Assembly (NCBI RefSeq): GCF_021869535.1
Contig: NW_026262582.1
Span: 40,362,001 to 40,426,000 of the forward strand
DNA: 64,000 bases
Reading direction: 5' to 3'
From: Mytilus californianus
Taxonomy: Eukaryota
In this document: positions 24,984 to 51,720 of the stretch, piece by piece
How the letters are laid out: every line of letters starts with the position of its first letter
How positions within the stretch are numbered: the first letter of the stretch is position 1
Made by a program: the position numbers and the translations under genes
The notes under the pieces: generated by a model
Databases searched by the model: none
Told to the model about the DNA's origin: nothing
Seen by the model: only the letters and a program-made list of their open reading frames with translations

Positions 24984-24985
24984 GA

Positions 24986-31094: not shown

Positions 31095-31844
31095 GATCGT
31101 CATATCGTACTAACCTACAAAATTTAATTTACCGAAGTAGAAACATATGAAGGCTTTTTCTTAATCATACTAACATATCTGTCCGCTTTTTAAAAAAACC
31201 CAATGAAACTATTAATATTTGACAATTGTAAAATTCTCAAAACGTTGCGAATATCCAGCGGGAAAAACATTCCATCAAATTCCATAAAATATTGACAGTC
31301 AGTATATTTTTATAATTTCTACTGTAAAAAAAAAACTTTATTTTTTTTCAAATCTATCTAAATTCAAACTTTTTTCTTGAATTTTCACTATATCTCGCAA
31401 AGTACATTGTATTTGTTTTTATGTGACACGTACTTATTTCAGATACTATATGAATATCAAAATTGTTACCGTCATTTTAGTTCGATATAAAAATTAACTT
31501 GATAAGCAAATATTGAAATAGAAAATGCTATTTATTTGTATACACGTTGATTTAAAAGAAGATACTTAAAATTTTGCTGGTGTGTTTTCCCCCTCACAAT
31601 TTCAGAATTCACGCAATCAAATTTAATTCTCTATTATTTTTTAAACTAGAACTTGATGTATAATGGAGAAAGGTTAGATGCAATGCCAATGAAAATATAT
31701 CAAGATATCAATGTCCTACGATAAACCTTAAGATTTGGTTCATGATGGTCTGAGGAATTATCTTTCTTAGAATGGCCCATCTCGAGGTCGTGCTAAGATC
31801 ATCGTAAGACCATCATATGGAAATCAATAAATATATGTTTAGAA

Positions 31845-32006
31845 TAAAATTGAGAATAGAAACGGGAATGCGTCAAAGAGACAACAACCCCGACTAAAGG
31901 GCAGAAAACAGCCCAAGGCCACCAATGGGTCTTCAATACAGCGGGAAAATCCCGCACCCGGAGGCGGGCTTTAGATGGCCCCGAAACAATAATATATACT
32001 AGTTCA
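31845..32006 (+). mobile_element. Family F repeat, 5' portion
   Basis: AAATTGAGAATAGAAACGGGAATGCGTCAAAGAGACAAC...ACTAGTTCAGT. Confidence 0.8.
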
Positions 32007-34579
32007 GTCTATGCATATAACAATGATCATGATACGTCGAGTATTCAAATTTGTGCTTTCCCCTTTCTCACTAAATCCACGAACATCAATATCCAGCTAA
32101 TACTATTGAATTAAAGGTATGTTTAAAAAGTCAAAATTATAATACATTTACATCTTGATAAAGTATCATCATTAAGTTCATTAATTTCGATATAAAAACT
32201 ACAATTTTATATATCAAAAGTATACAATGAGTTTTTGAGAAATATAAATAGCATACATTTGTGGTTCCAAAAATAAATAATTACAGGCAAATGATACAAA
32301 TTTACTAAATGAATTACAACTTTATTCCGGGTGTCGTTTACCTTGTAGGCAACATCAGAGTATGAAGAAAAAAATATGTTAAGTAACAAAAATTGCAATA
32401 GAAAACATTCGAATATAACTATTCAAAATTATTCAAAAATGAATACCCAAAATAAAGGGGTAACTGTTTGATGTTATATGAAAAGACAAAATATGAAAAA
32501 AATGTATGAAATGAATTTCATGTCATTACCGTGTGTCAAATATCAAATTAATTGTAACGAAGCAGGTATGACAAGCCCATCTTACTGGTCCCTTGAATAA
32601 AACAAAATCAAAGTATTATGAATCTATTAAAATAATAACATTTCAAATTTTCAAAAGGAATATTGTCAAAGATATTTATCTCAGGCGTTTACACTTCTTG
32701 TATTTACACCACGTTTAAAAGTACGACCGTAAGTTCGTTGTCTGATTAAAGATTAACATAATTATATTGTATCCGGCTACTCGTTCTACTGATAAAAAAA
32801 ATGGGTTTTTATTGTCCATAACTGATTAAATATAAGCTTCAAGTGAAATCTAGCTCGAAAGATTATCTGTAAATCAAAAATCTAAATATATGTGCTTATC
32901 TGAGATCAGACAAGGAATTTTCAATGGTATTAATAAACACTTTTTGAATAAAAAATTAAAAAAAACATAACAGAACTGCGAAAATTGTCTTATCTGAGTT
33001 ATGCCCATCAGTATTTAGATTTTCAACAGACTTATAAAAAGATGTTTGCCACCAATGTCTTACAAAAAGCTGTTGGTGGGAGTTAACAAAGCTTTGATAA
33101 GGGTTTTGCAAATTCTAACAATTACATAAAAGAAAAAAACACACACACACACATTTGTGACACTTTTTTTAATCCCCAAAAGGAGGATTTAACATAAAAA
33201 ATGACATCTTAGAAGACATTTCTGCAATAAGGTAACATACTATGGAATCCTGGTATCTTATCAATAAAAATTAACATAATTATCCAAGGATGACCTAGGT
33301 TAAGGTAGATAACACTTCTAAGTAACATAATACATATTATTTACTACTGTTCCACATGAGTGCTTGAAAAGAATTGATGAAACTGATTATAACAGATATA
33401 AAGGGTAAGCTCCCTTTATCCAGGTCGTCCCCTTTAAAGGATTGTAGAATTGTACCAGTTTTGCAATTTTAAGAAAAATGCAATTGCTCACATTTAACAA
33501 TGTATTTTGCTTACGATCGTGTGCTGAATGGCAATATTACAGTTAATGATATATTTAAAAAGTAATAAACTGAAGCCTTACACACAGCATCCAATATATA
33601 CTCATTATAAAAGAATGCAGACTACATGCATTACTTTCCCCTCCTGGAGTGGACAACACAGAAACACGTTATCTCAAAAACAACAAAATGTGTATGGAGT
33701 CACAAGGAAGACGTGTGCAAAAAACTTTTTTTTTTCTACTAGCAATGATATCAAATTTATAATCTAAAGAGTGATTGGTAAAAAATAAAAGTAAATGATT
33801 AAATGTTGTTTGCTTAACTGTTATACAAAGAGGGAATCCACAATGCTTCCTCTAATCAGATTCTGAAAAGGCAGATTGATCACACGTCCTACCCAATAAT
33901 AGGTCAAATATTGTATATGTAAAGAACGTGTCGCGGTTCAGGGGAATATGCTTATGACCATTTGTTTTACACTAGATAGCGAAGGGCTTACTTCTGATAG
34001 ATATCAAAAATTTGTCTTTACTCTCATCCATTATACCTTTTGGTTTTCTTGTTTGAATTGTTTCACACAATATCATATCGGGGCCATTTACAGCTTATTA
34101 TATGGTATGGGTCATGCACGTTATTTAGCTTCTTGTGGATAATTTCTCATTAGCATTCAAACCACATCTCCCAATTTTTATATTACATTCCTTTTCCACT
34201 GTCAGTCCAGGTTACCCACATGATTCCGTGTAATTCACCTCGCAGAACCTGCCTATTAGATTTGTTGTTAAATTTGTTCTCGTTCTAATTATTCAAGATG
34301 ATTTACCACTTAACGTTCATGAATGAACAATCAATCATTTGCTGATCATGTATAAAGATTTTAGATTTCTCCGATTAATTTCAAGTAGATAAAACTGAAA
34401 GTATCAAACTATTTGATTGAAAAGTATCTCACGTGAAAGACTTTAATATATTATAATATGATTTCTGTGCGCCTAATACGTGCTTATGAGCTAACATTCA
34501 TCTAGTACGTTTGACACGAACAGTTTTGAATGACAATTTGTTTTGTTCGCGTCGTTCAATCCATTAAAATATCTGATAT

Positions 34580-34990
34580 TGATGCCTGTTGTCTATATGT
34601 TCCTACTGCATGTCGTCTATCTATAATCTGTTCTTGTTTTCTGCCAAACACCTGGTTCTGTTGCCTGTCGTCTATTTGTTCCTTGTGCCTGTCTATTTTC
34701 TTTTCTATGAGTTTGCCAAAAACACTCTTCTAATAACGGCGTGCTTAATGATTCTGGTGCCTGTCGTGTATGTATTCCTGTTGTATGTTGTTTATTTGTT
34801 CCTGCTGCCTGTCGATTGTCTGTTCTTGTTGAGTGTTGAATACATGCTTCTGTTGCCTGCCAAATATATGCTTCGGTTGCCTGTTGTTCATATGGTCCTG
34901 TTGTTTGGGGTTTATCATTGCCTGTTGTCTTTTGTGTATTTAAACTTGTCAGTCGAGTATATTTTCCTGTTGCATCATGTATATCCATTC
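34580..34990. repeat. Degenerate 24-bp minisatellite inside the P1 coding tail
   Basis: Plus-strand unit resembles TTCCTGTTGCCTGTCGTCTATTTG. It gives 8-aa periodicity (QATEAYIW QATEACIQ HSTRTDNR QAAGTNKQ HTTGIHTR). Confidence 0.85.
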
Positions 34991-36260
34991 CTTTGGCTTT
35001 TCTCTTTTTTTTAGGTTTTTCTTTAATTTTCTTCTTTTTAGATGAACTAAACTCAAGCAAACTGTCTGAATCGGAACTACTGGAATTTGAACTGGGGTTT
35101 TCGGCTTTTAAACTGGACAATTCTAATGACTTTGATTTTTTGCTACAGTTTAAATCGCAAATGTTTTCTAACATTTTATCTACTTCATCAACATTTTTTT
35201 TAAACTGAAAATTTATTTCATAAAAAGTAAGTTTTGCCGGTAACGTGAGCAAATGTTGATCGATTTGCTTTTTTACTTTCTGAACTTCAATCATCACTTG
35301 AACATTTGAAGCCTCTCTTACGGTTATTTCTAAAATTTGCTTTGTATTCGCAACAGTTTTCTTTTTATTTTCGAGATCGGTAATAGAGGTTTCAAGTTTT
35401 GACTTTTCTTCTTCAAAATGCATTTGGTATCGTTTTGTCTGATTTTGTTTCATTGCATCAACTTTTTTTTGAACATTCGTCCAGAAGTCGTTGTATGTTT
35501 CCAGCTGAGAAATGTTGCGTGTTTCTAAATTTTCAAGTGACTCTCTTTCTAGTTGCATAACAATGTCTATATCTGATAATAAAGCGCTGACATCGTTTTT
35601 AGTCTTGTCTTCTGAATCCGTTTCTCTGAATTTCGATGCGGCATCCTCTATTGTCAAAACGTTTTCACACTTTCGATGGTTCACCGAGACACATGTTGCA
35701 CAACATGGAAGATCGTGATCAACACAGAACAATTCAAGATCTTTACTTTTGTGTTCAGTGCACATATTTTTGAAAGATTTCAGAACAATACCCTTTCTTG
35801 AAATATCAACAATTTCTTGGTTGGAACTAGATTTATTTATACGGTGATAGTTCACACAAGTGGAACAGAGAGTATCAGAGCAATCAATACAAACAGAATT
35901 TGCTTCTGACTTTTTATTGACGTCAAATCTTTCGCATGACATGCATATTTTTTCTGGCCTTTCTACTTTATGTTTTTCGATTAATCCGACAAGAAGAAAA
36001 TTCAGGGGCAGTCGCTTTGCCCATTGTTCTGGCGTTATACCTAATTCAGGGGCGGAAACGTTAGATCTACATACCGGGCAATTAATACATGTACGTGTAT
36101 TGTCTTTTTCGAACGCGGAAGTAATATATACCGCGATACAACTTTCGCAAAAAGTATGTAAACAAGGTAAATACTTCGGAATATTAAACTGTTCTAGACA
36201 AATTGTACACGTTGTTATATCATCGTCTGTTGTACAAGAACTTACTTCAGCTGTTGCCAT
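34617..36260 (-). CDS. TRIM-like E3 ligase, paralog P1 (RING C3HC4, B-box1, B-box2, coiled-coil, Ser/Lys-rich linker, 8-aa repeat tail), 547 aa
   Basis: Uninterrupted ORF. RING: CTIC-x11-CLHTFCESC...CPVC. B-box1: CMSC...CIDCSDTLCSTCVNYH. B-box2: CTEH...LFCVDHDLPCCATCVSVNHRKC. A predicted coiled-coil follows (about residues 215-350). No NHL/SPRY domain. An orthologue name cannot be assigned without a search. Confidence 0.93.
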   Translation of the reverse strand: MATAEVSSCTTDDDITTCTICLEQFNIPKYLPCLHTFCESCIAVYITSAFEKDNTRTCINCPVCRSNVSAPELGITPEQWAKRLPLNFLLVGLIEKHKVERPEKICMSCERFDVNKKSEANSVCIDCSDTLCSTCVNYHRINKSSSNQEIVDISRKGIVLKSFKNMCTEHKSKDLELFCVDHDLPCCATCVSVNHRKCENVLTIEDAASKFRETDSEDKTKNDVSALLSDIDIVMQLERESLENLETRNISQLETYNDFWTNVQKKVDAMKQNQTKRYQMHFEEEKSKLETSITDLENKKKTVANTKQILEITVREASNVQVMIEVQKVKKQIDQHLLTLPAKLTFYEINFQFKKNVDEVDKMLENICDLNCSKKSKSLELSSLKAENPSSNSSSSDSDSLLEFSSSKKKKIKEKPKKKRKAKGMDIHDATGKYTRLTSLNTQKTTGNDKPQTTGPYEQQATEAYIWQATEACIQHSTRTDNRQAAGTNKQHTTGIHTRQAPESLSTPLLEECFWQTHRKENRQAQGTNRRQATEPGVWQKTRTDYR

Positions 36261-36336
36261 TTTATTTGCTACTATTTAGTTCTGTATTTATATTTAGTTC
36301 TGTAGGATTGTCACATGATAATAACGCAACACATTC

Positions 36337-36390
36337 CTTACCAGGTGACCGAGATAACTAAACGTGAAAAAAGAAAACACATTAGTAAAG
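36337..36390 (-). promoter_or_regulatory. Conserved 5'-leader splice acceptor / 16-nt exon / donor motif (P1)
   Basis: Minus strand: TACTAAT, pyrimidine tract, TTTAG | TTATCTCGGTCACCTG | GTAAG. The same layout occurs at 41359-41400 (P2) and 48189-48235 (P3). Confidence 0.5.
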
Positions 36391-36621
36391 GGGAAAGTTT
36401 AAATCCGAGTTATACTGTTGACATGGTGTAAATGTTATACATGATAAATCGACAGTTACTCAACGTTCTAGAGACAGTATATGAATAACATTTACATTCT
36501 TTAATAAAAAAAGTTTAATTTAATCTTGATATATATATTTGGATAAAATGTATAATTTTTGCAGCGAGCAAATCTGGCGCTCGAAGGCGGGCGTCAGCTG
36601 ACCCTTAACAATAATGATTAT

Positions 36622-37052
36622 AAACTCAGCATAGATACTAGGATTAAAATTTTGTACGCCAGACGCAAATTTCGTTTACAAAAGACTTATCAATGACGCT
36701 CTAATAAAAAGAGTAAAAAAGGCCAAATAAAGTATGAAGTTGAAAAGCACTGAAGACCCAAAATTCTTAAAGGTGTTGCCAATATAGCTAAGGTAGATTT
36801 TTCCTAGGGTAGAAAATCCTGAGTATTTCGAAAAGATCAAAGTTTGTAACAGTTTATTTATTATTACGACTATATTAATGATAATTCATGTCAACACAAA
36901 AGTGCTGACTACTGGGCTGGTGATACCCTCGGGGGGAAAAACCTCCTCAAGCAGTGGCATCGGCCCATTGGTTGTAAATAAACTCAGATACCAGGAATAA
37001 AATTGTGTACGCCAGACGCGCGTTTGGTCTACAAAAGACTCGTCAGTGAAAC
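36622..37052 (+). mobile_element. Family B repeat with terminal direct repeat
   Basis: GATACYAGGAWTAAAATTKTGTACGCCAGACGC...TACAAAAGACT occurs at about 36632 and 36987. Relatives lie at about 45620-45955 (-), 42490-42740 (-), 57845-58040 and 59345-59460. Class unresolved. Confidence 0.65.
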
Positions 37053-39019
37053 TCAGTATATGACAATTATTATCCTGTTTTATGTATCGGGCAAAAACTA
37101 TGGAAGATAATGAGAAATTGTAAACAGCAAAAAATATTAACAAGACAAGATCTACAAAGAAATCAACAAAGTCTAAATTGTAAGTTCCCATCGTGGTTGC
37201 CCATGAAGACGATCTTTATCCTTTTTTTTTTTAAATTTTAGTCAAAAACTTTAATAAATGGAAACTGAATAAAAAGTTCAGCAATACAGATCAACAAAAT
37301 AGATTTTAGTCATGAATTATCTTTTAGTCGTTAATGTTGGAGAATGACCATTATTGAGAATGCACATATATCCAGGTGAGCGACAAATGCTCTTAAGAGC
37401 GAATAGTTTTATTATCATTTCCAATTTAATTCGGTAAGCGAAAGTTTCGTTTGACATAGAATTATAAAATAAACAAAATATCATTCAGGCTATAAATTTA
37501 AAAAAAAAATCCGTTTTAGGTCAATCCGATTCCTACAGATAATTAGGAGACAACTATTTGTATTACACGAATATGTATTAAAATTCACTAAATTGATATT
37601 CAGTCCCGATGTGATCCAAAGAGAGACATTTTCGTTTTGCATAGAATTATAATAGAATAACGGAAAATACCATATCAGGCTATGAATTTCACCAGTAATG
37701 TAAGTAATATGCTAATCCGATTTATATACAAAGAATAAAGAGATAACAGTATTGTATTGAGATTAGCAGGCATCAATTTAAGTTTATGAAATACAAAAAT
37801 TATGCCCTTAATTATCTAAATGAAATACTGCTATCTCAATTCTAATGCAACTGTATATATATATTTATATTGTTAAATAATGATTTTTAAAATAATGTTC
37901 ATTGATGTCTGCGCTTGCAAGCATCATTTAAAGCCATATTTTGTGCATTTGTTGACAGGAATTATGTGACGTTATCAATCAAAATAAAGGCATCTAGCAT
38001 TGAGGCATAACAATGATAAATGTAATCACAATATGAATTTGTTCAAACTTTCACTAAGAACAATTTGCAATTTGAAAAACACTGCATATGAATTTCTATC
38101 GATATTTTACACATTTTGTAAAGTCAAAAGATATACATTCTGTTAAAATCATTCTAAAATGGTTGTTTGTGAGTATAGCATCTCCTGTATAAAAATCCTT
38201 CTGTTCAAATGTGAATACTTAGTATGTAAGCAGGATTATGGAATTTTCACCTTAAATTTCAAAGATAAGTGAACATGCAACTTACTATAATGACTGGTAT
38301 TATAGTATACATAGGCTGTAAAACATATGCCCTGGTAACTTATACCGTTTTTTAATAAGATGGAGAAATGTTCTTTTTAATAACTGATAGTTTTTTTCTA
38401 AACTCAACGTCCAATGCATAATCATGATGAGGACTAAAGACATTAAAATTAAAATGTCGGTTCTGTAACGTGGGTCGACCAATTGAAGAAAACACGGTGG
38501 AAATGAGGGTATGTTGGAAGGCGCCGATGTAGGCAAGAGTATGCAACCTACAGAATAATCCCAAAAAGTGTCATTAAGTGATTTTCTCTAATAAGACATT
38601 GGATTCGACATCCACATTCCGACCTGACGTGATCTCGTGCAATAAACCCCGCACAGTCAAAAGGGTCTTCCGGGTATAACTAGAAGACGGGAAAAATTCA
38701 GGTGATCATGTGTTTTTACTTTAGTCAATATTTTGGGAAAGTAGTTATTCTCTTGATCACCAAGGGGTATTCGTCGAATACATGTACCATATTAGAATCG
38801 ATTGCGTTTATTTGTAATTTTATTTTCCAATTGTCCAACTTAATTCAAATATTATATATACAAATTCAATAAGCGTAAATTAAATAATTTTGTTTGACAA
38901 TTTTACTATCTTTTTTTTTTTAATTTTCACTTCTGCATTTTGCATTTCACTTCTATGCCCTTTTCTCTATTTTTTGTGGTGCTTTTTATCTAGAGTTGTT
39001 GCACTGGTTATCATTTCGA

Positions 39020-39480
39020 TACCCCAAATGTAAAAATTGTCATAAAGGAACTCTCTGGATTAGTTGAACTCGAAGGGGACATAAATGAAATCTCTTGACT
39101 TACTGGAGGACCTGTTCTCAAAGAGAGCCAACATGGTTTTTTTTCTGGATGGCCTGTGGTCAAAATGAGCCTAACTGAACACTCAGATTTGTCTATGCTC
39201 GAACGAGATCTATAAGAACTCTCTGGTTGACAATTGCTTTTAGAGCAGACCGAAATGAACTCTCTGCATGATATGTACTGAAAGTGGACCCTACTGAACT
39301 TACTGGATGACCTTTACTCGAGGTTGACCTTATTAAACTTATTGGAAGACCTGTTCTATAAGTGGACATACAGGAGCTATCTGCATGACCTGTAATTAAA
39401 GGTGCTTTCAGTGAAAGCTATGTTTGACCTGGGCTCGAAGTGGGCCTAAATGAACTATCTGAATGAACTGCTGTGAACCC
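39020..39480. repeat. Degenerate 39-bp repeat forming the P2 tail
   Basis: Minus-strand translation gives 13-aa units: GHADSSCMSTYRT, GLPISLIRSTSSK, GHPVSSVGSTFST, YHAESSFRSALKA, CQPESSYRSRSSI, TNPESSFMTIFTF. Confidence 0.75.
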
Positions 39481-40508
39481 TTACGATCTCTTTGGATGGT
39501 ATACTAGAAGTGGAAATACTATCAGCATCGCCAACTGCTTCCACTGTAATGTCGTTTTTGATACATTTGGAACTTGACAAATGAAAAAACTTTCCTTTTA
39601 TCATTGTTTATGATGATGTTTTCATCTATGTTTTTTAAAACTGAATCTCTATTTTGTACGTAATTTTAGAGGTCTCAATATTTCGAAAATGTTTTTCAAT
39701 ATTTGTATTAAGTTTGTGAACTTCAATCATTAACTGAACATCCGAAATCTCTTTCAAGGCTACTTCCAGAATGTTCTTAGTATTTGGTACTGCTTTCTTT
39801 ATATTCTCTACATCACGAATGGTGATGGCTTTCTTTTGTCGATTTGTTTTTAAGTTTTTCAATACTTTGCTGCATTTTTGCCAGAAAAGTGTATATTTTT
39901 GCATTTCAATATCATAAATGGCTTCCATGTCAACTAACTAACTCCTTTTAGATTCTAAAAATTATCCATAATCAGCTAATGAAGCACTGACTTGATTTTT
40001 TTCTTGACTACGGAGTTTGATGGTCGGAAAATCTAAGCAGCTTCCTCAATAGTCAAAGCATTCTCGCATTTTCTTTGGTTTACTGAAATACATATTGAAC
40101 AACATGGGAAATCATGATCCGCACAGAACAATTCCAGCTCTTTATTCTTGTGCTCGGAGCTTATATTCTTAAAAAACTTCAAAGCGTAACCGTCTTTTGA
40201 AATGTCTGATATTGGAACAATTTCATAATTTTAAATTGATCTACTACTTTTATGACATCGTGTACATGTTGCGCAAAGAGCATCAGAACAATCAATACAC
40301 AAGGAAGACGATTGTTACTTCGTATTAACATAAAATTGTTCGCATGACATGCATATCTTTTCGGTATGTTCAAATTTGTGTTTAGCGCTTAATCCGGCAA
40401 GAAGAAAATTCAAAGGAAGTCGTTCTGTCCAATGTTCTGGTGTTATACTTGACTCGTAATTAGGAGTGGATACAATAGCCCGACAAACCAGGCAATGAAT
40501 ACATGCAT

Positions 40509-41130
40509 TTTTTTCATTTACCTGTGTTTAAAGTTATTGCAAATGGATGGTATTTTTGTTCGAGAATATTGTTTTTCTTTAATTGTTTAACATTTCTTAC
40601 CGATATAACATGTTACTTTTATTATTCTTCCCTTAGTTTATTTATTTTGTATTTACATTGTGTCATAGGTCAAATTTATTTGTTCAGTGTATGTTCAATG
40701 GTGTTAATATGTCCTTTGATTGAGTTCACCTATTTCAGTTGATATTTTATAGTGTGTCGTTCTATGTTGTGATGTTACACTATTGTTTCAGAAAAAGGGT
40801 GAAGGTTTGGTACCATTAAAACGTTTAAACCCGCTGCATTTGTTTGCACCTGTCCTAAGTCAGGAATCTGATGTTCAGTAGTTGTCGTTTGTTGATGTGG
40901 TTCATAAGTGTTTCTCGTTTCTCGTTTTTTATATAGATTAGACCGTTGGTTTTCCCGTTTGAATGGTTTTACACTAGTAATTTTTTGGGGCCCTTTATAG
41001 CTTACTGTTCGGTGTGAGCCAAGGCTCCGTGTTGAAGACCGTACTGTGACCTATAATGGTTTTCTTTTATAAATTTTGACTTGGATGGAGAGTTGTCTCA
41101 TTGGCACTCATACCACATCTTCTTATATCT
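40509..41130 (-). mobile_element. Family A (subfamily A2) interspersed repeat inserted into the P2 RING
   Basis: Matches the copy at 18968-19272 in reverse (head AAGAAGATGTGGTATGAGTGCCAATGAGACAACT). The flanks rejoin to a RING sequence colinear with P1. Exact boundaries are ambiguous by a few nt. Confidence 0.85.
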
Positions 41131-42149
41131 ATTGTCTTTTTTGATCGCGGAATTCATATATGTCGCGATACAGTTTTCACAAAATGAATGTAAACAAGGT
41201 GAATACTTTTGGACATTAAACGTTTCAAGACAAATTTTACACATTGTTATATCATCGTCTGTTGTACAAGAACTTACTTAAGCTGTCGCCATTTTATTTG
41301 CTGCAACTTTTTTCTCTCGTTCTGTTGGACTGTCACAACATAACAAGACAATAAATTCCTCACCTGGTAACGGAGATAACTAAATTTGAAAAAAAATATA
41401 CATTTCAGAACGGAAATATTTAAATAGAGTTTTACAATTGACATTATTAGCCGGTGTTTACTAAACGTTCAGGGGAAAGTATTTCATGCACATTTTACAT
41501 TCTTTAATGCGCAATGATCATGAACACTATATTTTGCAGTATTTGGCAAAACTACAAAATTATAATAAACATATACAACTAGATAAACAATTACGGTAAT
41601 TCTATTGTAAATAAATAATTAAATGGACGAAGAAACTTTTTAGATTGGCAAACCACAAAACAAATAAACTAGATTACTAACCAGATAAGTAAGTATTTAC
41701 AATAAATCAATTGAATCCTGGGATATAAATAATTATTAATTTTTATGTGGTTGGTCCTGACATACAGAGACCCTCCATGTTGGATGCTAGATGAATTATG
41801 ACGCAAATTTAAATGAAACGCAGCGAAATATGTCTTAATTTTATCTCGTTAAATTAGGTATCATTTACTTTGATAAGTGAATCAATTGATTTGAAAATAT
41901 TATGATAGGTACAGGAAGATGAATGTGTATACATCACATCGGGAAAGTTATATACCCAATAAACGTCATTTATAACACACATGACGGTATGCTAGATGAA
42001 GAAAAAAAAAAACGGACTGAGCTGTTGTATCTTCTATGTTTTTTACTGTCTATTGAATTTGCTTGCCGATTTTAGTCCCCCGTTCTATTATAAGCCTTTG
42101 AATCGTTTTTACATATTTGATTACTCAAACTTCTCATATTGAGTTTATT

Positions 42150-42470
42150 TCAGAAACACGTGTCGTATGTTCTTACGCGTTTATTTTGTAAAGCTGTCGT
42201 GTATACTTAAAAGTTATTTTGTGAGATTGTTGTGAGTACTTTCATGCATAGTTTGTCGACTTGTGAGTACTTACACGTATATTTTGTAGACTTGTCATGA
42301 GTATCTACACGTATATTTTGTAAACTTGTGAGTACGTATAGGTATATTTTGTAAACTTGTGAGTACAATGTACATACATGTATATTTTGTAAAATTGTGA
42401 GTACTTACACGTATTTTGTAAGTGTGTCGTGAGTACTCAAACGTTTATTTTGAAAACTGTACGTACAACT
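42150..42470. repeat. Degenerate ~30-bp tandem repeat (~8 units)
   Basis: TTGTGAGTACTTACACGTATATTTTGTAAAC-like units. Confidence 0.8.
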
Positions 42471-43487
42471 TTTCAAAACATTTTTACAGAAGCGGGTCGA
42501 TACAGCTGCTGATGGACTATCACTCATCGAGGGTATCATCAGTTCAGTATTTATTTCTTCGGTACTGACATAGTTTATAACAAACATTTCTCGAATTATC
42601 TGTTTATGAAAATATAGAAATTATTAAGAAACTATGGTTTCGACTCCCTCAGGCAAAAAATGATGGATTTGGTTATTATATTTTTGTCCTTATTGGTCAT
42701 ATAGCTTTTCAACTGTTTTTGTTCTTATACATCCTTGGCTTTCAAATATTGTATATTTAGAAGCGATTCGGACGCATGAAATTCATGAAGTGTTGTTTTC
42801 ATTATTTTGTTAAAATCTATACAATCGAGTTTTAATCATCTTGTTATATTACCACGATTGAGGTAACACAACAGAGTATATTTTGAAAATGCAACTGTTT
42901 ATGTTTGAAATGCTGTACCTTTTTTATGTGTTGAAAAATAAAGACATTTGAGAGGTAATAAATGAAAGAAGAACCAGCAAGCTTGAACACACTGATATCA
43001 TTATGCCAAGTGATAAAATAATGAACAAGTGTCATTTGGAAAAAAAATGGATTATTTTTTGTAGCTTCGTATTTTCGTTAAAAGAAATTTTTCGCAGATT
43101 TCTAATAGCATGTGTTAATGAATAATGACTTTCTCTGTTTTGTGAGACCTTATAAATCACAAATATTTGAAACTAAATTTCTTTTTAATTGGACCCTATA
43201 TCAAAAAGACATTGAAAGTACATTTTATCTTTGTTCTTGAAAGTTTTTTTTATTTTATTGGTTTCCAAACTTTTGAAATCGAATATATCTGATGAAGAAA
43301 CATTTTGTGACCTCGATACACTTCTAGTCTCCAAACATGTACAGTGAGTAATATTGCATTGCATTATTTGTTATATATGCACTTGTATTTCAGTTCACGA
43401 ATTTGTATTATCAGTCCTCATTTCATAAGGAAAGATCTATTACATGACCAAAAATCCATTTCAGGCTATAACCTTTAAATAAAGACA

Positions 43488-43790
43488 ACAGTAGTATACC
43501 GTTGTTCAAAAGTCATAAATTGATTAAGAGAAAACAAATCCGGGTTACAAACTAAAACCGAGGGAAACACATCAACTATAAGAGGAAAACAACGGAACAA
43601 CAGAAACACTGAACTGCAACAAAAACAAACGCCAACATACATAGAAACGGACTATTTGATAACAACTGTTATATTCCTGACTTGGTACAGGACATTTTAA
43701 GAAAAAATGGTGGATTGAACCTGGTTTTATGGCTAGCCAAACCTCCCGCTTATATGGCAATGTTAAAAAATACCGCTAAAATGACAACAC
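43488..43790 (+). mobile_element. Family A-related repeat inserted in the duplicated flank
   Basis: Contains the ATTCCTGACTTGGTACAGGACAT...TGGTGGATTGAACC core. It interrupts homology with 37485-37740. Confidence 0.7.
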
Positions 43791-44024
43791 TAGGTGACAT
43801 GAATACAGTACAAACAAACGCAAGAACATTCAGTACAGAGAAATACATTTTAGATAAATCCTATTCCTTGCATGGATTTAGAAGATAACAGTATTGTAAT
43901 TGAAGAGTCTTGTTCATGCCTTTAGAGCATTACATAAAAATTGATGCCCTGAAATATTCAAATACTATAATACTGTTATCTTAATTACAATGCAACTGCG
44001 AAACATCGTTGAATTATACTTTAA

Positions 44025-44776
44025 GGATGTACACCTCTTAGGAGTCCAAAATTTCTAGAATTAAACTTTTTTTCTTTTCTTGATTTTTGGGTTTATATGA
44101 CTGTAAGACAGTAATTGATTAAAAATCATATTGTGGTGCACTTCTTTTTTCGCTACGGCCATTTACCTATTTTTAATGATTTTCCCATTTTTCATAAATT
44201 TTAACTCATTTTTAGGCTATCATCATGAAAAGAATCACAGTTTCAAAATTAAACTTTTTTTTCATGCTTTCGCTTAAGATGAAATGAACCAATATGAATA
44301 AATTTACCTTAAAAATCTATAGTTTGGTGTTAATATTAAAACTTTTATAAAATTTTGTTGATTTTTCTTGTCAAATTGACCATGCTGTCAATTTTGTAAA
44401 TTTGGGATTTTTTTCTTTTGTTTTAGAACAAAAAGCATATTATTTCAACTTCTTTGTTATAAATGATTTGAAAAATACATATCTAAGAATTTTCAAAAGA
44501 CAAAATTGATATGGGATGTACATATTTTTGGTAAAATCATTTCCTTGTATCCTAACCCATTTTCCCAACATTTTGGCTGATGACACGGATTGGTTATAAA
44601 ATTTGAAAATTTTATTACTTAAAAACTACTTATTTTAAGTACACAATTTTTTCATTGAGTTTAGTTTGATTATAATATTTTTAAGATTCATTGATATTTT
44701 TCACTTGTATCTCATGTTTTGGAAATAATTCCCGAACGAGATTTCAACGATACTTAAATATCAGAAAAAGACATCC
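44025..44776. mobile_element. Non-autonomous DNA transposon, Kolobok-like
   Basis: TTAA|GGATGT ... ACATCC|TTAA. It interrupts the duplicated intergenic block. Confidence 0.65.
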
Positions 44777-46844
44777 TTAAATCTGATTTTATATGAATAT
44801 ATGTATACTATATAAATAAATATGACTGCGCTTGCAAGCTTAAGTTCAGCATTTCAATCATGTAATTAATAACCTACAATTTGTGACGTTATCCAAACAA
44901 AATTAGCGCTGCTATGTGGCATTACAATTTTAAATACATGTATAACCAAAACGATATTGTATTCTTTGGTATTCGTTCACAAGATATGTTTGAACGAGTA
45001 TTTATTGATAGTATTATTGAGTATGTGCTAAGGGTGTTCTAAATAAAAGGCGGAAGATAAAAAGGGGGAAATTCAAAGCTCATAAGTCGAAGAAAAACCA
45101 ACATGCCATGGCAAAAAAAAAAACGAAAGACGGAGAAAAGACAAACAACGGGTGTTCTCAGTTGCTCCGGAAGGGTAAACAGATTCCAACTCAATGATAC
45201 AATATCTGCCAAACAACTACGCACAATAAGTATTCGTTCAAGCCATTTACGATAGTGACTGACAAACAATGAAAGTGTGAATCTCTTATTAAATAATATG
45301 TTTCCAATGGTATTTTTACACACGTTGTAAATTTGTGAGAGCAAAGACTTGCCACGTCAGTTCTGTTAAAATCTTGCCTTTATAGTTGTTCATGAGTATT
45401 GCATCTCACTCCTTTCTTTGGTCGTTTTCGTTTTTTGCCAAGACATTGTGAGTTCTTTTCCGCCTCTCTTTTCTTCTTTAAATAAAATACATGTCATGAA
45501 TGAAATCTATCAGTTCGAACGTAGATATGAAAGGATGGATGTTTTTTTAATCCACAATTTACAAAATTAGGCAAAATCTATAAAAAACATGCAACTTAAG
45601 CATAAGCTTGTAATTTTATACGCCTTGTATTTTGGATGAGTTTGTTCAACCTCTGGGTTGATGCCACTGCTGGTGTACCTTTCGTTCCCGATGGTATCAG
45701 CAGTCTAGTAGTTAGAACTTTTGTGATGACATAAAATATCACTAATATGTTAATTTTCTATAAATTTACGTTTCTAAAATATTGATGTATTCGAAATGCT
45801 AAGGTTTTTCTACCCCGGCACCAGGCACAAATTTTCGGAATCGTCGGCTTTTAATGGTCTTCAACTTCGTACTTTATTAGGCCTTCCAAATGTTTGGATT
45901 CAAACGCTATTATTATGTACAAGAAACGTGCGATTGGTACACCAAATAAAAAAACCTTTTAAATCTTTTATTAGCCTTTTCAAATGGTCTGATATTACAG
46001 TATTCAGAAGCTATAGACTTCAAAACTATAAAAAAAAAATATGCCCGAATAATTTAAATAGTTTTAAAGACGTGGTTAAGAAAACGAAAAAAATGTTCAA
46101 TCTATTGATTGATGTTTTATGCTCAATGTCCTTCGTATTATAATGACGAGACGAGAGAAAAAAGAATAATTTATTCAATAGGTAAATAAAAAAATAAGAA
46201 GATGCCAATGAGACATCTCTGACATTAACAATAACAATTATAGGTCACCGAACGGCTTTCAACAATGAGAAAAGTGTAACATGGGTAAACCAAAGAAGAA
46301 ATTATAGGGGAAAAGATGGTATTTTGGATAGGGGTGGGCTACCTACGGAACATTCAAAACAGATTTTTTGTTAATTTTTTTTACATGACATTCCGATAAA
46401 GAGGCATTTCATTTGACGTCAATATTCCAACCTGACTTAGTGTCGTGGCTCAGGGATTAATTAGGAGAAGCGGAAAAAACAGGAAACAATTACTTGTGTT
46501 TCTTATCCCGTCAACATTTTGGAATGTTAGTTATAAATTTCATCATTAAGGGGCACTCATCGTATGAATGTTTCGTATCAAAAAGAATTATTTTGTTCTG
46601 AAAACTGTTTTGTAGTTGTCAAATTTTATTCAGAATAATACATATTAAATAAAAAGTTCAATAAGTGCTGCTTAGATTAAGTTTGATAATACCACTCTTC
46701 GAATCTGATTGAGTTTTCATTGGTAAATGTGTGAAAGTGTTTAAAACGGTGTGATTATGTATTCTCTTTTTGCATTTCCCGCCTTAACTTTTCTTTTTTT
46801 TTCATTTCATTTTTCTTTTCTTTTTTTAAATTTTCTTTTCTTTT

Positions 46845-47116
46845 TTAAAAAAATTTTTTCTTCTTTTTTTCTGCTTTTATCGGATCTGTGCCCCAAGTGG
46901 GAATATACTGAGCATCGTCAACTACTTTCTCTGCAAAGTCATAAAACTTTTCAGTTTTTGCAATGTTTTTAACACATTTGGAACTTGACAAATCTAAAGC
47001 CTTTGCTTTTTTATCGATGTTTATGACGATTTGTTCTTCAATGTTTTTAACAATGTCGTCTATATCTTTTAGAAATTGAATCTCTATTTTACACGTTATT
47101 GCAGAAGTCTCAAAAA
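46845..47116 (-). pseudogene. Out-of-frame continuation of P3 (ETSAITCKIEIQF...DLSSSKCVKN...AEKKKKKFF*)
   Basis: Aligns with P2 (ETSKITYKIEIQF...LSSSKCIKN) and with P1 (FYEINFQF...LELSS). Removing one base joins it to 47110-48135 as a ~429-aa ORF. Confidence 0.8.
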
Positions 47117-48135
47117 TTTCCAAAATCTTTATCAATGTATCTATTTAGCTTCTGAACTTCAATCATCAATTGAACATCCGAAGCCTCTTTTAAGGTTGCT
47201 TCCAATATTTGCTTAGTATTTGCGATAGCTGTTTTTCTATTCTCGACCTTCTGAATAGATAACTCGAGTTTTCCCTTTTCACTGTGGAAGGTTTCTTTAT
47301 ATTTGTTTGTCCATTTGATTTTAAGTTCCTCAATCCTTTTCTGCAATATTTTCCAAAAAGTATCACATTTCTGCAATTCTAAATCAAAAGCGGCGTCCAT
47401 GTCAACTAAAGAACTTTTTTCAGCTTCCAACACAGTATCTAAATCAACCAATAAAGCACTAACCTCATTTTCAGTCTTGCTTACTTTGTTCAAAGCTCGG
47501 AAATTTTTAGCAGCTTCTTCGATAGTCAAAACATTCTCACATTTTCTATGTTTTACGGAAACACATATTGAACAGCATGGTAAATCATGATCAACACAGA
47601 ACAGTTCTAACTCTTTATTTTTGTGCTCGGAGCACATATTCTTAAAAGATTTCAAAGCGTACCCTTCTTTCGAAATGTCTGATATTGGAACTATTTCATG
47701 ATTTGAACTTAATTTATTACTTTTATGACATCGTGTACAATTTGCGCAAAGAGCATCAGAGCAATCAATGCACACGGAAGACGCTTCTGACTTCGTATTG
47801 ACATCAAATCGTTCGCATGACATACATATCTTTTCGGTACGTTCCACTTTATATTTTTCGATTAATCCAACCAGGAGAAAATTCAAGGGCATCTGTTTTG
47901 ACCATTCTTCGGGTGTTATTCTTGCCTCAGGGGCAGAAACTTTAGACCTACAAATAGGGCAGTCAATACTTGTTCTGTCTTTTTCAAATGCGGAAGTAAT
48001 ATATGTTGCGATACAACTTTCGCAAAAAGTATGTAAACAAGGTAAATATTTCGGAATATTAAACTGTTCTAGACAAATTGTACATGTTGTTATATCGTCG
48101 TCTGTTGTACAAGAACTTACTTCAGTTGTCGCCAT
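47110..48135 (-). CDS. TRIM-like protein, paralog P3 (RING, B-box1, B-box2, coiled-coil); 341 aa as read, truncated by a +1 frameshift
   Basis: All Zn ligands are intact. ATG at 48135 is homologous to the P1/P2 starts (the ORF-track start at 48153 is a TTG). The stop at 47110 follows an extra base in the A5 run at 47112-47116. Confidence 0.85.
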   Translation of the reverse strand: MATTEVSSCTTDDDITTCTICLEQFNIPKYLPCLHTFCESCIATYITSAFEKDRTSIDCPICRSKVSAPEARITPEEWSKQMPLNFLLVGLIEKYKVERTEKICMSCERFDVNTKSEASSVCIDCSDALCANCTRCHKSNKLSSNHEIVPISDISKEGYALKSFKNMCSEHKNKELELFCVDHDLPCCSICVSVKHRKCENVLTIEEAAKNFRALNKVSKTENEVSALLVDLDTVLEAEKSSLVDMDAAFDLELQKCDTFWKILQKRIEELKIKWTNKYKETFHSEKGKLELSIQKVENRKTAIANTKQILEATLKEASDVQLMIEVQKLNRYIDKDFGNF

Positions 48136-48417: not shown

Positions 48418-48885
48418 CTGGACAACACTAAAAAGAAGGCAATTTGGATTAGGGACTTTTGACTTGTAATGGTCACCTACCGACCATTTAAAGATTTCTT
48501 GCAGAGATTTTATCACATGCATATGCATAAAGCATGGAATACTCGCAATACATGGCATTGGGTTAAACACCCTTTTCCCGACCGTATATGTGTAGTTATA
48601 AATCCGGGAACCTCAAACGGGTACCTTCTCATGATTTATATTAAAATAAGGCTGGACAACACTAAAAAGAAGGCAATTTGGATTAGGGACTTTTGACTTG
48701 GAATGGTCACCTACCGACCATTTAAAGATTTCTTGCAGAGATTTTATCACATGCATATGCATAAAGCATGGAATACTCGCAATACATGGCATTGGGTTAA
48801 ACACCCTTTTCCCGACCGTATATGTGTAGTTATAAATCCGGGAACCTCAAACGGGTACCTTCTCATGATTTATATTAAAATAAGG
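48418..48885. repeat. 234-bp tandem duplication with one mismatch
   Basis: 48418-48651 versus 48652-48885 differ only at 48467 (T) and 48701 (G). Confidence 0.97.
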
Positions 48886-50540: not shown

Positions 50541-51720
50541 TTTCAATGTGAAGGTCTTTTCATGAAAACAAGAATACAAAGGATTTACTAATTAAGGGTA
50601 GGTCTGAACAATTTTTTAAAGATATTTAACAGTTAATGAAATGAAAGAGACATGAGTTGTACCACAAACAGACCTCGTCTGGAATAAAATGTCTAATCCT
50701 GGCAATAAATAATTAATATGATGTACGTTGGGGATATGAATGTGTCCCCTGGGTACAAATCCTATGGTGAATTAGAAATGGCTTATCAAGGCAATGGATG
50801 GGGATATAAACCATTTTAGAGATACAATGTAATTAACGATTCATGATATAAGGGGGATATGACCTCAAGGGGTCCTCCGGTACAGCCAAAATGAATTGAC
50901 ATGGCCTGTAAAAATATATATGGTTTTTGAGTTGGACATATACAACTCAATTATTTTACCTTGTAAGTCAAGGGTAAAGGTCATAATGATATTAGACTGA
51001 TATGGTATCTTAAAGTTATACACTTTATGCTAAATATCATAAGTCAATGTAAAAAAATAAGTGTCGGCTAGGATAAGTGTATATGAGAATAGAATCCAAA
51101 AGAAGATGAAGAAGATTCAAGAATACTTAAGTTAAACATAATGTCTCCATTCATTTCTTCTTGGAAGCCAGGGAAACATGATAAAGAAAAGTGAGAACTG
51201 AGTACTGAATAATCTGCCGTTTCTTTCATGATGAAATGAAATATGGAATTTTTTTTTATCTGTAAATATGATGTGGATACTGGCGATGTCGAAAATGGTT
51301 TCTCTTTCCTGTCGTGTTGAATGGTTCGTAACTATCATGTAAAGCTCATAGATCTATTTTGCATTTTGTATTTTTTAGTTATGTTTTTGTGTTTTTTATA
51401 TTTTGTTCATAAAAAAAAACAATTATATTTGGACAGGCAAGTTACTGATAAAAGTATATAATTGCAGAGGTCAATTATTTCGGTATGTGCGTATGTTTAA
51501 GCAATAATTTATATAATAAGAATAATATTTACTATACGCATTCTTCATTTAAAGTCATTGTACAATTAAATAGATAGAATAAATTAATTAAAACTATACA
51601 AAATCTTGTCAAAACTGACTGCACATTTAATGTTTAATCAAATGGCACAATTTTAAAAGTTGTAATAGTACGACATTTGGTTATCTCAACTTTTTATTAT
51701 CAATAATAACACTACATATA

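What the first reader, a model, noticed from the sequence alone, without database searches (positions are those of the whole stretch)
34556..48135. Tandem TRIM cluster whose members share the RBCC core but carry mutually unrelated, minisatellite-derived C-terminal tails
Seen: three same-strand paralogs align from ATG through the coiled-coil to a linker ending LSS (P1 LELSSLK, P2 LSSSKCIKN, P3 DLSSSKCVKN) and then diverge completely. P1 has Ser-rich and Lys-rich segments plus ~15 8-aa repeats (24-bp unit). P2 has ~11 13-aa GHxxSSFRST-like repeats (39-bp unit). P3 has a short K/E-rich tail. Known: TRIM substrate specificity usually lies in a folded C-terminal domain (SPRY, NHL, PHD-bromo), and bivalve TRIM/B-box genes are expanded. 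Inference: this lineage replaces the specificity domain with rapidly exchanged disordered repeat tails recruited from tandem DNA. That would be a birth-and-death diversification system, with one intact, one frameshifted and one dead copy, possibly immune-related.
Basis: partly seen in the sequence, partly recalled or inferred. Interest (0 to 1): 0.8.

Follow-up and report, generated by a model that had tools for sequence, protein, structure and literature searches.

The report
Mussel TRIM genes with disordered repeat tails
Three tandem copies of a mussel-specific TRIM ubiquitin-ligase gene (one intact and probably transcribed, one frameshifted, one dead) carry fast-evolving disordered repeat tails instead of a folded C-terminal domain, an unusual but not surprising branch of a known gene-family expansion.

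Summary
Three minus-strand, intronless RING/B-box/coiled-coil paralogs lie at 34617-48135.
- P1 is intact (547 aa). Transcript-like contigs from two studies cover it colinearly through the tail.
- P3 has one extra T in a T5 run and evolves neutrally against its M. coruscus ortholog (omega 0.94).
- P2 is dead: a transposon sits in the RING and there are many frameshifts.

The 24-bp (P1) and 39-bp (P2) periodicities are real (z about 10), but the units are only 45-55% alike. No PHR or propeller exon is hidden in the window. AlphaFold predicts the tail is disordered.

On an RBCC tree, the tail-bearing proteins form one Mytilus clade nested among PHR- and propeller-bearing TRIMs, and all switch modules at the same L-x-LSS junction.

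Tails are not rapidly exchanged. Tail types follow subclades and recur across species, and P2 and P3 share their tail start and 3' flank. The arrays lie inside the coding sequence, between homologous unique sequence, which points to in-situ slippage rather than capture of a minisatellite.

Tail omega is 0.8-0.9, against 0.2 for the RBCC. One contig allele has a stop codon before the repeats. I found no evidence on immunity.

It is a new member of a known kind and of moderate interest.

The parts
34617..36260 (-). P1: intact, single-exon TRIM gene of 547 aa (RING, B-box1, B-box2, coiled coil, disordered tail)
   Evidence: It is one ORF. Pfam finds a RING and B-box. AlphaFold gives pLDDT 70-93 for residues 13-385. 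Logan contigs of X1, X3 and X4 are colinear with it, for example 34469..35758 in a single contig.
36066..36209 (-). P1 RING finger (residues 18-65)
   Evidence: PF13445 at 3.7e-10 and PF00097 at 1.2e-6. C18, C21, C33, H35, C38, C41, C61 and C64 are invariant in 18 relatives.
35652..35951 (-). P1 B-box1 (about residues 104-150) and B-box2 (residues 164-203)
   Evidence: B-box2 matches PF00643 at 25.3 bits, above the cut-off. B-box1 has only sub-threshold hits (PF25287, PF22586 in P3). The Cys/His ligands C106, C109, C124, C127, C132, C135, H139, C167, H170, C179, D181, C186, C187, C190, H195 and C198 are invariant.
35160..35651 (-). P1 coiled coil (helices 204-213, 216-316 and 319-339) and return helix 357-367
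   Evidence: The AlphaFold secondary structure has pLDDT 85-93 here.
35112..35126 (-). LELSS junction (residues 379-383), the fixed boundary between the RBCC and the C-terminal module
   Evidence: The motif sits at the same position in the tail-type, PHR-type (P0018) and propeller-type (P0030, P0043) relatives.
34620..35105 (-). P1 disordered tail (residues 386-547). It holds a Ser/Asp-rich block at 35099-35061, a Lys-rich block at 35039-34992, and then 8-aa repeats.
   Evidence: pLDDT is 24-30 with no secondary structure. It has no Pfam domain. 74% of residues are polar or charged and the net charge is +10. Omega is 0.78-0.93 against relatives that share this tail.
34592..34927 (-). Degenerate 24-bp tandem array of 14 units in register. 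About 13 units are coding and the last one or two lie beyond the stop at 34619-34617.
   Evidence: Autocorrelation at lag 24 has z = 10. Units are listed. Its unit is related to the 24-bp array of the M. galloprovincialis relative (PWM test z 3.8, p 0.004).
34016..34616 (-). P1 3' untranslated region (minimum extent)
   Evidence: Contigs span 34016..34554 (X1), 33804..34283 (X4) and 34469..35758 (X3).
36261..36425 (-). 5' flank and 5' UTR conserved among the three copies
   Evidence: blastn aligns P1 36424-36098 with P2 41444-41130 at 78%, and P2 41425-41133 with P3 48258-47976 at 75%. An X4 contig covers 36192..36322.
38900..41444 (-). P2: dead paralog of the P3 type
   Evidence: tblastn finds only fragments. 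There are frame-breaking deletions and more than 20 stops in each frame.
40506..41130 (-). Interspersed-repeat (transposon) insertion that splits P2's RING
   Evidence: The P1/P2 and P2/P3 alignments break here. The same element occurs at 62009-62442, 12905-13290, 18963-19273 and elsewhere.
39020..39487 (-). P2 degenerate 39-bp array (11-12 units, about 13 aa each, roughly RSTSSxGHPxSSF), broken by stops and frameshifts
   Evidence: Autocorrelation at lag 39 has z = 9.5. Units are listed. It has no relative among 1.84 billion representative proteins, apart from a chance hit to a translated 65-bp satellite.
39490..39604 (-). P2 tail start (LSSSKCIKNDITVEAVGDADSISTSS...), homologous to P3-type tails
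   Evidence: blastp to P0012 gives 50% identity at 6e-8, and it also matches P0011 and P0008. DNA homology to P3 runs to 39508/46895.
46845..48135 (-). P3: paralog with a single frameshift. The two open parts are 48135..47113 and 47111..46845.
   Evidence: ORFs are and Pfam RING and B-box hits. Omega is 0.94 against the M. coruscus ortholog, which carries a different 1-bp frameshift.
47112..47116 (-). T5 run holding one extra T, the P3 frameshift
   Evidence: The sequence is. The M. coruscus copy reads FGNFEISAITC in frame. The alignment shows a 1-nt gap at column 1019.
46770..46890 (-). P3 A-rich stretch encoding a K/E-rich tail end. The stop falls inside it.
   Evidence: Translation is and TRF rows for 46784-46866 are. 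The M. coruscus ortholog reads through the equivalent K-rich stretch.

Best explanation
This is a tandem cluster of three intronless paralogs. They belong to a Mytilus-restricted clade of TRIM (RING, B-box1, B-box2, coiled coil) E3 ubiquitin ligases.

In an ancestor of this clade, the folded C-terminal module was replaced by an intrinsically disordered tail. That module survives in the nearest relatives as a PHR domain or an NHL-like propeller, and the switch lies at a fixed L-x-LSS junction.

The tails share a loose plan: an acidic Ser/Asp-rich block, a basic Lys-rich NLS-like block, and then short tandem peptide repeats of 8, 9, 10 or 13 aa. The repeats arose and change copy number by in-frame replication slippage inside the coding sequence. 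They diverge almost neutrally, while the RBCC core stays under purifying selection.

The cluster turns over by duplication, mosaic recombination or gene conversion, transposon insertion and frameshift decay. P1 is the only working copy here, P3 is a recent pseudogene and P2 an old one.

Inferred, not shown: P1 acts as a dimeric RING E3 ligase of the 'no C-terminal domain' class. Any targeting would come from short charged motifs in the proximal tail, or from pairing with domain-bearing paralogs. The repeats themselves are largely dispensable.
For: Shown:
- There are three paralogs and no other copy or hidden PHR or propeller exon in the window.
- P1 is intact. Contigs from three runs in two studies cover 33.8-36.3 kb colinearly, with no joints, and leave the flanks uncovered.
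- Relatives P0002, P0004 (extended), P0008, P0010 and P0016 are single uninterrupted ORFs.
- The RBCC folds confidently and tail residues 386-547 have pLDDT below 50.
- The tails have no Pfam domain.
- The tail-bearing proteins form one clade (support 92; inner Mytilus clade 99). It is sister to the PHR types and nested among the propeller types.
- The junction is at the same position in all three module types.
- Tail types follow subclades and recur across species.
- Array copy number varies. The M. galloprovincialis relative has 22.6 units, L001 has 4.8 and P1 has 13-15. The near-identical P0015 and P0016 differ by two units.
- The RBCC has omega 0.21 and the tail 0.78-0.93.
- P3 has omega 0.94 and independent frameshifts in two genomes.
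- P2 carries a transposon and frameshifts.
- M. coruscus gene C is a mosaic. Against P1 it has dS 0.19 over residues 1-197 and dS 0.61 over the coiled coil, and the tail cannot be aligned.
Against: - The runs that cover P1 are RNA only 'by guess'. The one certain RNA run (X21, 6% of it read) has no reads on P1.
- ORF openness across the array is weak evidence of constraint, because the antisense strand is also open over the array (34589..35014).
- The X3 contig carries a stop at codon 436, so even P1 may be dispensable.
- The tree is FastTree with SH-like support only. Support for the full tail clade is 92, which is below the 95 level that the tree output stars.
- No experiment bears on ligase activity, localisation or targets.
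- The direction of module replacement rests on rooting with oyster sequences.
Confidence: 0.7

Rival explanations
1. The tails are specificity modules captured from pre-existing non-coding minisatellites and swapped rapidly among paralogs, giving a repeat-based diversification system, possibly immune.
For: - Each subclade has a different repeat unit: 24, 27, 30 or 39 bp.
- P1's and P2's units show no robust relationship.
- P1's array runs slightly past the stop codon.
- M. coruscus gene C combines a P1-like front (protein 97-100% identical over the B-boxes) with a foreign coiled coil and tail, so C-terminal halves can be exchanged.
- The window holds several non-coding minisatellites.
Against: - Tail types track the RBCC phylogeny and persist across species.
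- The arrays lie between homologous unique coding sequence.
- All periods are multiples of three, unlike the window's non-coding arrays, which have periods of 21-65 bp.
- Units are 45-55% alike, so the arrays are old.
- Tail omega is close to 1, and a stop-bearing allele sits before the repeats.
- P2's array lies inside a P3-type tail with shared flanks.
- No protein with a P2-type tail exists in 1.84 billion representatives.
Confidence: 0.1
2. The whole tail-bearing clade, P1 included, is decaying. After the C-terminal domain was lost the genes became dispensable, and the 'tails' are neutral read-through into low-complexity DNA. P1 is merely the last copy not yet broken.
For: - Two of three copies here are dead. 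All three M. coruscus copies carry lesions (the 1-bp deletion in gene C is).
- Tail omega is 0.8-0.9.
- All four tail SNPs in the contigs change the protein, and one makes a stop.
- P1 has no strict ortholog at the syntenic M. coruscus locus.
- Presence/absence variation of an E3 ligase gene is documented in M. galloprovincialis (PMC7653742).
- The certain RNA run has no reads on P1.
Against: - RBCC omega is 0.21 against P0002 and P0004, and 0.10 against M. coruscus gene C over residues 1-197.
- All zinc ligands are invariant in P1.
- Intact single-ORF members exist in at least four Mytilus species.
- Contigs reach depth 25.8 in X3.
Confidence: 0.15
3. The gene models are incomplete. The real transcripts splice onto a folded C-terminal domain exon outside the window, so the 'tails' are intronic or alternative 3' ends.
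For: TRIM genes with alternative C-terminal exons exist in other animals (general knowledge). The one gene model that spans introns is the M. coruscus model P0013, 9.8 kb long.
Against: - Contigs run colinearly from the coiled coil through the tail, the stop and at least 600 nt of 3' UTR, with no joint.
- tblastn finds no PHR or propeller coding sequence anywhere in the 64 kb.
- Five relatives are uninterrupted ORFs, including a 2.5-kb transcript-sized contig.
- The P0013 model is stitched across pseudogene lesions.
Confidence: 0.03

Closest known systems
TRIM proteins without a recognised C-terminal domain (class 'C-V' of the usual TRIM classification; NCBI labels many of these mussel genes 'TRIM56-like')
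   Same: The order RING, B-box1, B-box2, coiled coil is the same, and no folded domain follows. They are presumably dimeric RING E3 ligases.
   Different: The mussel clade is intronless, tandemly clustered and restricted to Mytilus and close mytilids. Its tails are built from short tandem peptide repeats whose unit differs between subclades. The class assignment rests on my general knowledge of the classification, not on a test here.
Mytilus TRIM paralogs with a C-terminal PHR domain (for example P0018, P0020) or an NHL-like propeller (for example P0030, P0043)
   Same: They are 36-44% identical across the RBCC, have the same L-x-LSS junction at residues 377-383, and form the sister and outgroup clades.
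   Different: Their C-terminal module is folded: PF08005 at 1.7e-28 in P0018, and a weak NHL hit in P0030. No such sequence is present in the window.
Lineage-specific TRIM expansions that evolve by birth-and-death, for example the teleost finTRIM expansion (title and abstract of PMC2657112, listed)
   Same: They are multiplied by duplication, and the most variable part is C-terminal to the coiled coil. In this cluster the copies are tandem and two of three are pseudogenes; tandem arrangement and pseudogenes in finTRIMs are general knowledge, not read here.
   Different: In fish the variable part is a folded B30.2 domain under positive selection. Here it is a disordered repeat tail with omega near 1 and no sign of directional selection.
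Bivalve expansions of RING and B-box genes, and gene presence/absence variation in mussels (PMC8382680, PMC7653742)
   Same: Expanded B-box and RING orthogroups are reported in bivalves. A dispensable E3 ubiquitin ligase gene was validated by PCR in M. galloprovincialis. The non-colinear centre of this cluster fits that picture.
   Different: The passages returned by my term searches of those papers do not describe the tail architecture or this clade. I did not read the papers in full.

Membership tests
TRIM / RBCC E3 ligases | N-terminal C3HC4 RING finger | tested here: met
   In P1, PF13445 scores 40.1 bits (cut-off 25.2) and PF00097 scores 28.7 bits (cut-off 21). All eight ligands are invariant.
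TRIM / RBCC E3 ligases | B-box zinc finger(s) after the RING | tested here: met
   B-box2 matches PF00643 at 25.3 bits against a cut-off of 24.1. B-box1 has only sub-threshold Pfam hits, but its Cys/His pattern is invariant in 18 relatives.
TRIM / RBCC E3 ligases | Long coiled coil directly after the B-box | tested here: met
   AlphaFold predicts helices at 216-316 and 319-339 with pLDDT 85-93. This is a prediction, not a measurement.
TRIM / RBCC E3 ligases | Ubiquitin ligase activity and coiled-coil dimerisation | not testable with these tools
   This needs biochemistry.
TRIMs with no C-terminal domain (class C-V) | No folded or recognised domain after the coiled coil | tested here: met
   The tails of P1 and eight relatives have no Pfam hit at E below 0.01. 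The exception is a compositional DUF3432 hit in P0004. pLDDT is below 50 for residues 386-547.
PHR-type or NHL/propeller-type TRIMs | C-terminal PHR domain or NHL-like propeller, in the ORF or in a downstream exon | tested here: not met
   tblastn with the P0018 PHR and the P0030 and P0043 propellers against all 64 kb gives nothing at E of 1 or better, apart from one 18-aa chance match. Contigs show no splice out of the tail.
Minisatellite (tandem DNA array) | Head-to-tail units similar enough to be detected as an array, with variable copy number | tested here: inconclusive
   In the window TRF finds neither tail array even at score 30. Periodicity is highly significant (z about 10), but units are 45-55% alike. 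In the M. galloprovincialis relative the same 24-bp array has 22.6 copies at 73-79% matches, and copy number differs among relatives.
Minisatellite-derived coding sequence (capture of a pre-existing non-coding array) | The same unit exists as non-coding tandem DNA elsewhere, or predates the ORF | not testable with these tools
   This needs a genome-wide search of mussel assemblies. Within the window and the loci I held, no other copy of either unit was seen. The only protein-level hit to P2's unit is an unrelated 65-bp satellite in GC-50% DNA.

The most novel reading that the evidence does not exclude
The disordered tandem-repeat tails could be the target-recognition modules of a fast-diversifying mussel TRIM family. 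This would be a disordered, slippage-driven counterpart of the hypervariable B30.2 loops of vertebrate antiviral TRIMs. New specificities would come from changes in repeat unit and copy number, and from recombination at the fixed L-x-LSS junction.
Probability: 0.08. Interest if true: 0.75.

Novelty: new member of a known kind. Interest (0 to 1): 0.35.

Why it matters
It gives a clean, datable example of a folded substrate-binding domain being replaced by a disordered repeat tail at a fixed junction. The genes are intronless, so exon shuffling cannot explain the replacement.

It also shows that most of the apparent tail 'diversity' is near-neutral slippage and decay, not an organised diversification system.

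For annotators of mussel genomes it flags three points:
- These genes are single-exon.
- Several current models are truncated or stitched across pseudogene lesions. Examples are P0004, which starts at an internal Met, and P0013, a 9.8-kb model.
- Cluster content differs between closely related genomes.

If the proximal charged blocks prove functional, the clade would be a tractable case of a TRIM that works without a folded recognition domain.

Tried and rejected
- **TRF on the tails.** It found nothing, even at score 30. I used autocorrelation instead.
- **Hidden domain exons.** tblastn with PHR and propeller queries over the whole window gave nothing.
- **Relatives of P2's 39-bp-repeat tail.** There were none among the 120 homologs. 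The exhaustive search returned only P0121, a translated 65-bp satellite from an unrelated GC-50% metagenome contig. It shares only 18-23 nt with P2 at the DNA level, so I rejected it as chance.
- **Common origin of the P1, P2 and P0016 repeat units.** I suspected this from a shared 'TG-P..Q' look. In the PWM test with a column-permutation null, P1 to P2 gave p 0.006, but a non-coding control array scored as well (p 0.012) and the reciprocal test was not significant. I rejected it as unsupported. My first version of this script timed out.
- **M. coruscus gene C as the strict ortholog of P1.** I rejected this. dS is 0.19 and 0.61 in the two halves, against 0.056 for the P3 ortholog, and the flanks cannot be aligned.
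- **Rfam and tRNA scans of the window.** Both were empty.
- **Earlier findings of this scan.** Nothing was found by place or by words.
- **Literature.** My searches found nothing describing this tail architecture.

Full report
**1. What is in the sequence**

The window is AT-rich eukaryotic DNA (GC about 32%). It comes from a Mytilus mussel: every relative above 50% identity is from Mytilus, and a 30-kb M. coruscus locus (L003) is colinear with the window's flanks at 91-95% identity. The finding's genes lie on the minus strand.

- **P1** is a single open frame, 36260..34617, 547 aa. It has a RING and B-box2 by Pfam. All zinc ligands of the RING and both B-boxes are invariant across 18 relatives.
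- **P3** starts at 48135 and is open to 47113. One extra T in a T5 run (47116-47112) shifts the frame. A second frame, 47111..46845, carries the rest of the coiled coil, DLSSSKCVKN and a short tail that ends in an A-rich K/E stretch.
- **P2** (about 41444-38900) is a wreck. A 625-bp interspersed repeat, present in many copies in the window, splits its RING at 41130-40506. Against P3 it has several frame-breaking deletions, and every frame has more than 20 stops.

tblastn finds no fourth copy in the 64 kb.

**2. The tails**

P1's tail (residues 386-547) holds:
- a Ser/Asp-rich block (35099-35061);
- the Lys-rich block KKKKIKEKPKKKRKAK (35039-34992);
- a 24-bp periodic array of 14-15 units (about 34927-34592), the last one or two beyond the stop codon.

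P2's tail starts LSSSKCIKN and is followed by 11-12 units of 39 bp (39487-39020). Both periodicities are far above shuffles: lag 24 gives z = 10 and lag 39 gives z = 9.5, while the RBCC control is flat.

Tandem Repeats Finder misses both arrays even at score 30, because neighbouring units are only 45-55% alike.

The statement that the three tails diverge completely needs correcting.
- P1 is unalignable with P2 and P3 after the junction.
- P2 and P3 share the tail start and patches of 3' flank.
- P2's tail start matches P3-type tails of other species.
- P2's array is therefore an expansion or insertion inside a P3-type tail.

**3. Is the tail part of the message, or is a domain exon missing?**

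I laid four runs on 31800-37700. Logan contigs of three runs from two studies cover P1 colinearly:
- X3: one 1290-nt contig spans 34469..35758, from the coiled coil through the tail and stop into the 3' UTR.
- X1: contigs cover 34565..35274, 34016..34554 and 35504..36073.
- X4: contigs cover 34759..35470 and 33804..34283.

No joint falls in the gene. The flanks (32194-32981, 36331-36527) are uncovered, and the assemblies are only 50-77 Mb. The runs therefore behave like transcriptomes, although the tool marks 'RNA' as a guess. The one certain RNA run (X21, about 6% of it read) has no reads on P1, so expression is not universal.

Other evidence against a missing domain exon:
- tblastn with the PHR domain of P0018 and the propellers of P0030 and P0043 finds nothing in the window.
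- Relatives P0002, P0008, P0010, P0016 and the extended P0004 gene are uninterrupted ORFs.
- AlphaFold with an 18-sequence alignment folds residues 13-385 with pLDDT 70-93, including a 100-residue helix. It leaves 386-547 at pLDDT 24-30 with no secondary structure.
- The tails of P1 and eight relatives have no credible Pfam domain.

**4. Family context**

Among the 120 best homologs I classified C-termini by similarity to reference domains:

| C-terminal type | Number |
|---|---|
| Propeller | 54 |
| PHR | 19 |
| Under 40 aa after the RBCC (many are truncated models) | 23 |
| Other tail | 24 |

Of the 24 'other' tails, the strongly polar or charged ones are exactly the closest relatives, P0001-P0012, P0015, P0016 and P0019.

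A FastTree of the RBCC region alone (117 rows) gives this picture:
- The tail-bearing proteins fall in one clade of 15 rows (SH-like support 92; the inner Mytilus clade has 99).
- That clade is sister to a PHR-type clade.
- Both are nested among propeller types, with oyster propeller types as the root.

The motif L-x-LSS sits at residues 377-383 in all three kinds. In P0018 the PHR domain (PF08005, 1.7e-28) begins a few residues after it.

Within the clade the tail types follow subclades:
- **P1 type** (Ser-rich, Lys-rich, 8-aa repeats): P0001-P0004.
- **10-aa W.DEPV type**: P0005 and P0006.
- **P3 type** (SSSKCVKN, acidic, then basic): P0008, P0011 and P0012. The window's P3 has the same tail but was not a row in the tree.
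- **EMEPESLE 8-aa type**: P0010.
- **9-aa GHTGPPxQR type**: the outlying P0015 and P0016.

These types recur in M. galloprovincialis, M. californianus, M. edulis and M. coruscus. Tails are therefore mostly inherited with their RBCC, not rapidly exchanged.

**5. How the repeats arise and evolve**

P1's array is homologous to that of two relatives. The flanking unique tail sequence aligns on both sides, and the units are related (PWM test z 3.8). Copy number differs widely:
- 22.6 units at 73-79% matches, wholly inside the CDS, in M. galloprovincialis L002;
- 4.8 units in L001;
- 13-15 degenerate units in P1.

The near-identical P0015 and P0016 differ by two 9-aa units. All tail periods seen (24, 24, 27, 30 and 39 bp) are multiples of three, unlike the window's non-coding arrays of 21-65 bp. 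This is what in-frame slippage within coding sequence produces. I found no sign of capture of a foreign minisatellite, though only a genome-wide search could exclude it.

P2's unit has no relative in 1.84 billion representative proteins. The single hit is a translated 65-bp satellite from unrelated GC-50% DNA, which I count as chance. It cannot be shown that P2's array ever served in a working protein.

**6. Selection**

| Comparison | Region | Omega (Nei-Gojobori) |
|---|---|---|
| P1 vs P0002 | RBCC | 0.21 |
| P1 vs P0002 | tail | 0.93 |
| P1 vs P0004 gene | RBCC | 0.21 |
| P1 vs P0004 gene | tail | 0.78 |
| P3 vs M. coruscus ortholog | whole | 0.94 |

- In the contigs, all four tail variants change the protein. 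One of them (34955 G>A in X3, depth 25.8) turns codon 436 into a stop just before the repeats. In the RBCC there are six non-synonymous and four synonymous variants.
- The antisense strand is also open across the array, so openness of the frame is weak evidence of constraint.
- The core is conserved and the repeats look largely dispensable. The recurring acidic-then-basic plan of the proximal tail is the more plausible functional part, but that is inference.
- P3 against its M. coruscus ortholog is 94.8% identical, with 51.8 non-synonymous and 13.2 synonymous differences. Each genome carries its own 1-bp frameshift. This makes P3 a real, recent pseudogene rather than an assembly slip.

**7. 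Turnover of the cluster**

Window 61267-41127 and 30551-27403 are colinear with L003, but the central 10 kb is not. The M. coruscus gene at P1's position (gene C, protein P0019) compares with P1 as follows:
- 92-98% identical at the DNA level only over 36268-35670 (dS 0.19, omega 0.10);
- 62-75% identical in the early coiled coil (dS 0.61);
- unalignable in the tail and in both flanks.

It is a mosaic paralog, not an ortholog. This shows that recombination or gene conversion within the conserved RBCC can join different C-terminal halves. That is the one piece of evidence for tail exchange, and it is a single event. The M. coruscus second gene shares P2's 5' end at 92% but has a P1-like body, which again points to unequal exchange.

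Presence/absence variation of an E3 ligase gene has been validated in M. galloprovincialis (PMC7653742). Bivalve RING and B-box orthogroup expansions are on record (PMC8382680).

**8. Mechanism, with what is shown and what is inferred**

Shown:
- the gene anatomy;
- contig cover of the tail, colinear with the gene, in transcriptome-like runs;
- predicted disorder of the tail;
- clade structure;
- the selection contrast between core and tail;
- decay of P2 and P3.

Inferred:
- P1 is a dimeric RING E3 ligase of the class without a C-terminal domain.
- The Lys-rich block may act as a nuclear localisation or polyanion-binding motif, and the Ser/Asp block as a phospho-regulated acidic patch.
- Targets may be reached through such short motifs or through pairing with domain-bearing paralogs.

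Nothing here bears on immunity.

**9. Verdict**

Domain replacement and birth-and-death hold. Rapid exchange, minisatellite capture and a specificity role do not. The cluster is a new, lineage-specific member of a known kind, and it is of moderate interest.

Noticed in passing
window 34955 (P1 codon 436): The 1290-nt contig of run X3 (depth 25.8) reads A instead of G on the plus strand. This turns CGA into TGA, giving an allele that ends before the 8-aa repeats. All four tail variants seen in the contigs are non-synonymous.
   Followed up: partly
window 40506-41130; also 62009-62442, 12905-13290, 18963-19273, 5886-6122, 51716-52004, 53492-53684: This is an interspersed repeat of about 400 bp, presumably a non-autonomous transposon. 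One copy splits P2's RING. It is also present in the M. coruscus locus L003 at 6190-6630 and 23637-23932.
   Followed up: partly
window 36528-37118: An element between P1 and P2 has an internal direct repeat (36633-36701 and 36986-37054, 81% alike). It has very deep contig and read cover, and reads that 'go back 336' bases. It is a tandem or high-copy transcribed repeat family with no Rfam match.
   Followed up: no
window 48418-48885: A perfect tandem duplication, 2 x 234 bp at 99-100% identity, lies about 160 bp upstream of the conserved 5' flank of P3.
   Followed up: no
window 24354-25395: A large 42/21-bp minisatellite has 15 copies at 93% identity followed by a more degenerate arm. It gives long ORFs in several frames on the minus strand and shows what a young non-coding array looks like here.
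   Followed up: no
window 52551-52710 and 54606-54802: Two arrays of hairpin-forming 22/43/65-bp units (ATGTCGTTATAACGACAT-like) lie about 1.9 kb apart. They may be the ends of a mobile element.
   Followed up: no
proteins P0018, P0020 and 17 others (Mytilus): These TRIM relatives carry a C-terminal PHR domain (PF08005, 1.7e-28 in P0018) directly after the L-x-LSS junction. I did not expect a TRIM-PHR architecture and did not check it against the literature.
   Followed up: partly
window 41127-30551 against L003 17068-26500: The central 10 kb of the cluster is not colinear with the M. coruscus assembly, although both flanks are 91-95% identical. All three M. coruscus copies carry lesions: frameshifts in the P3 ortholog and in gene C, and a degraded gene B.
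   Followed up: partly
locus L002 5752-7917 (M. galloprovincialis): The annotated protein P0004 (638 aa) starts at an internal Met. The ORF is open from an upstream ATG with a complete RING and would encode 721 aa.
   Followed up: partly
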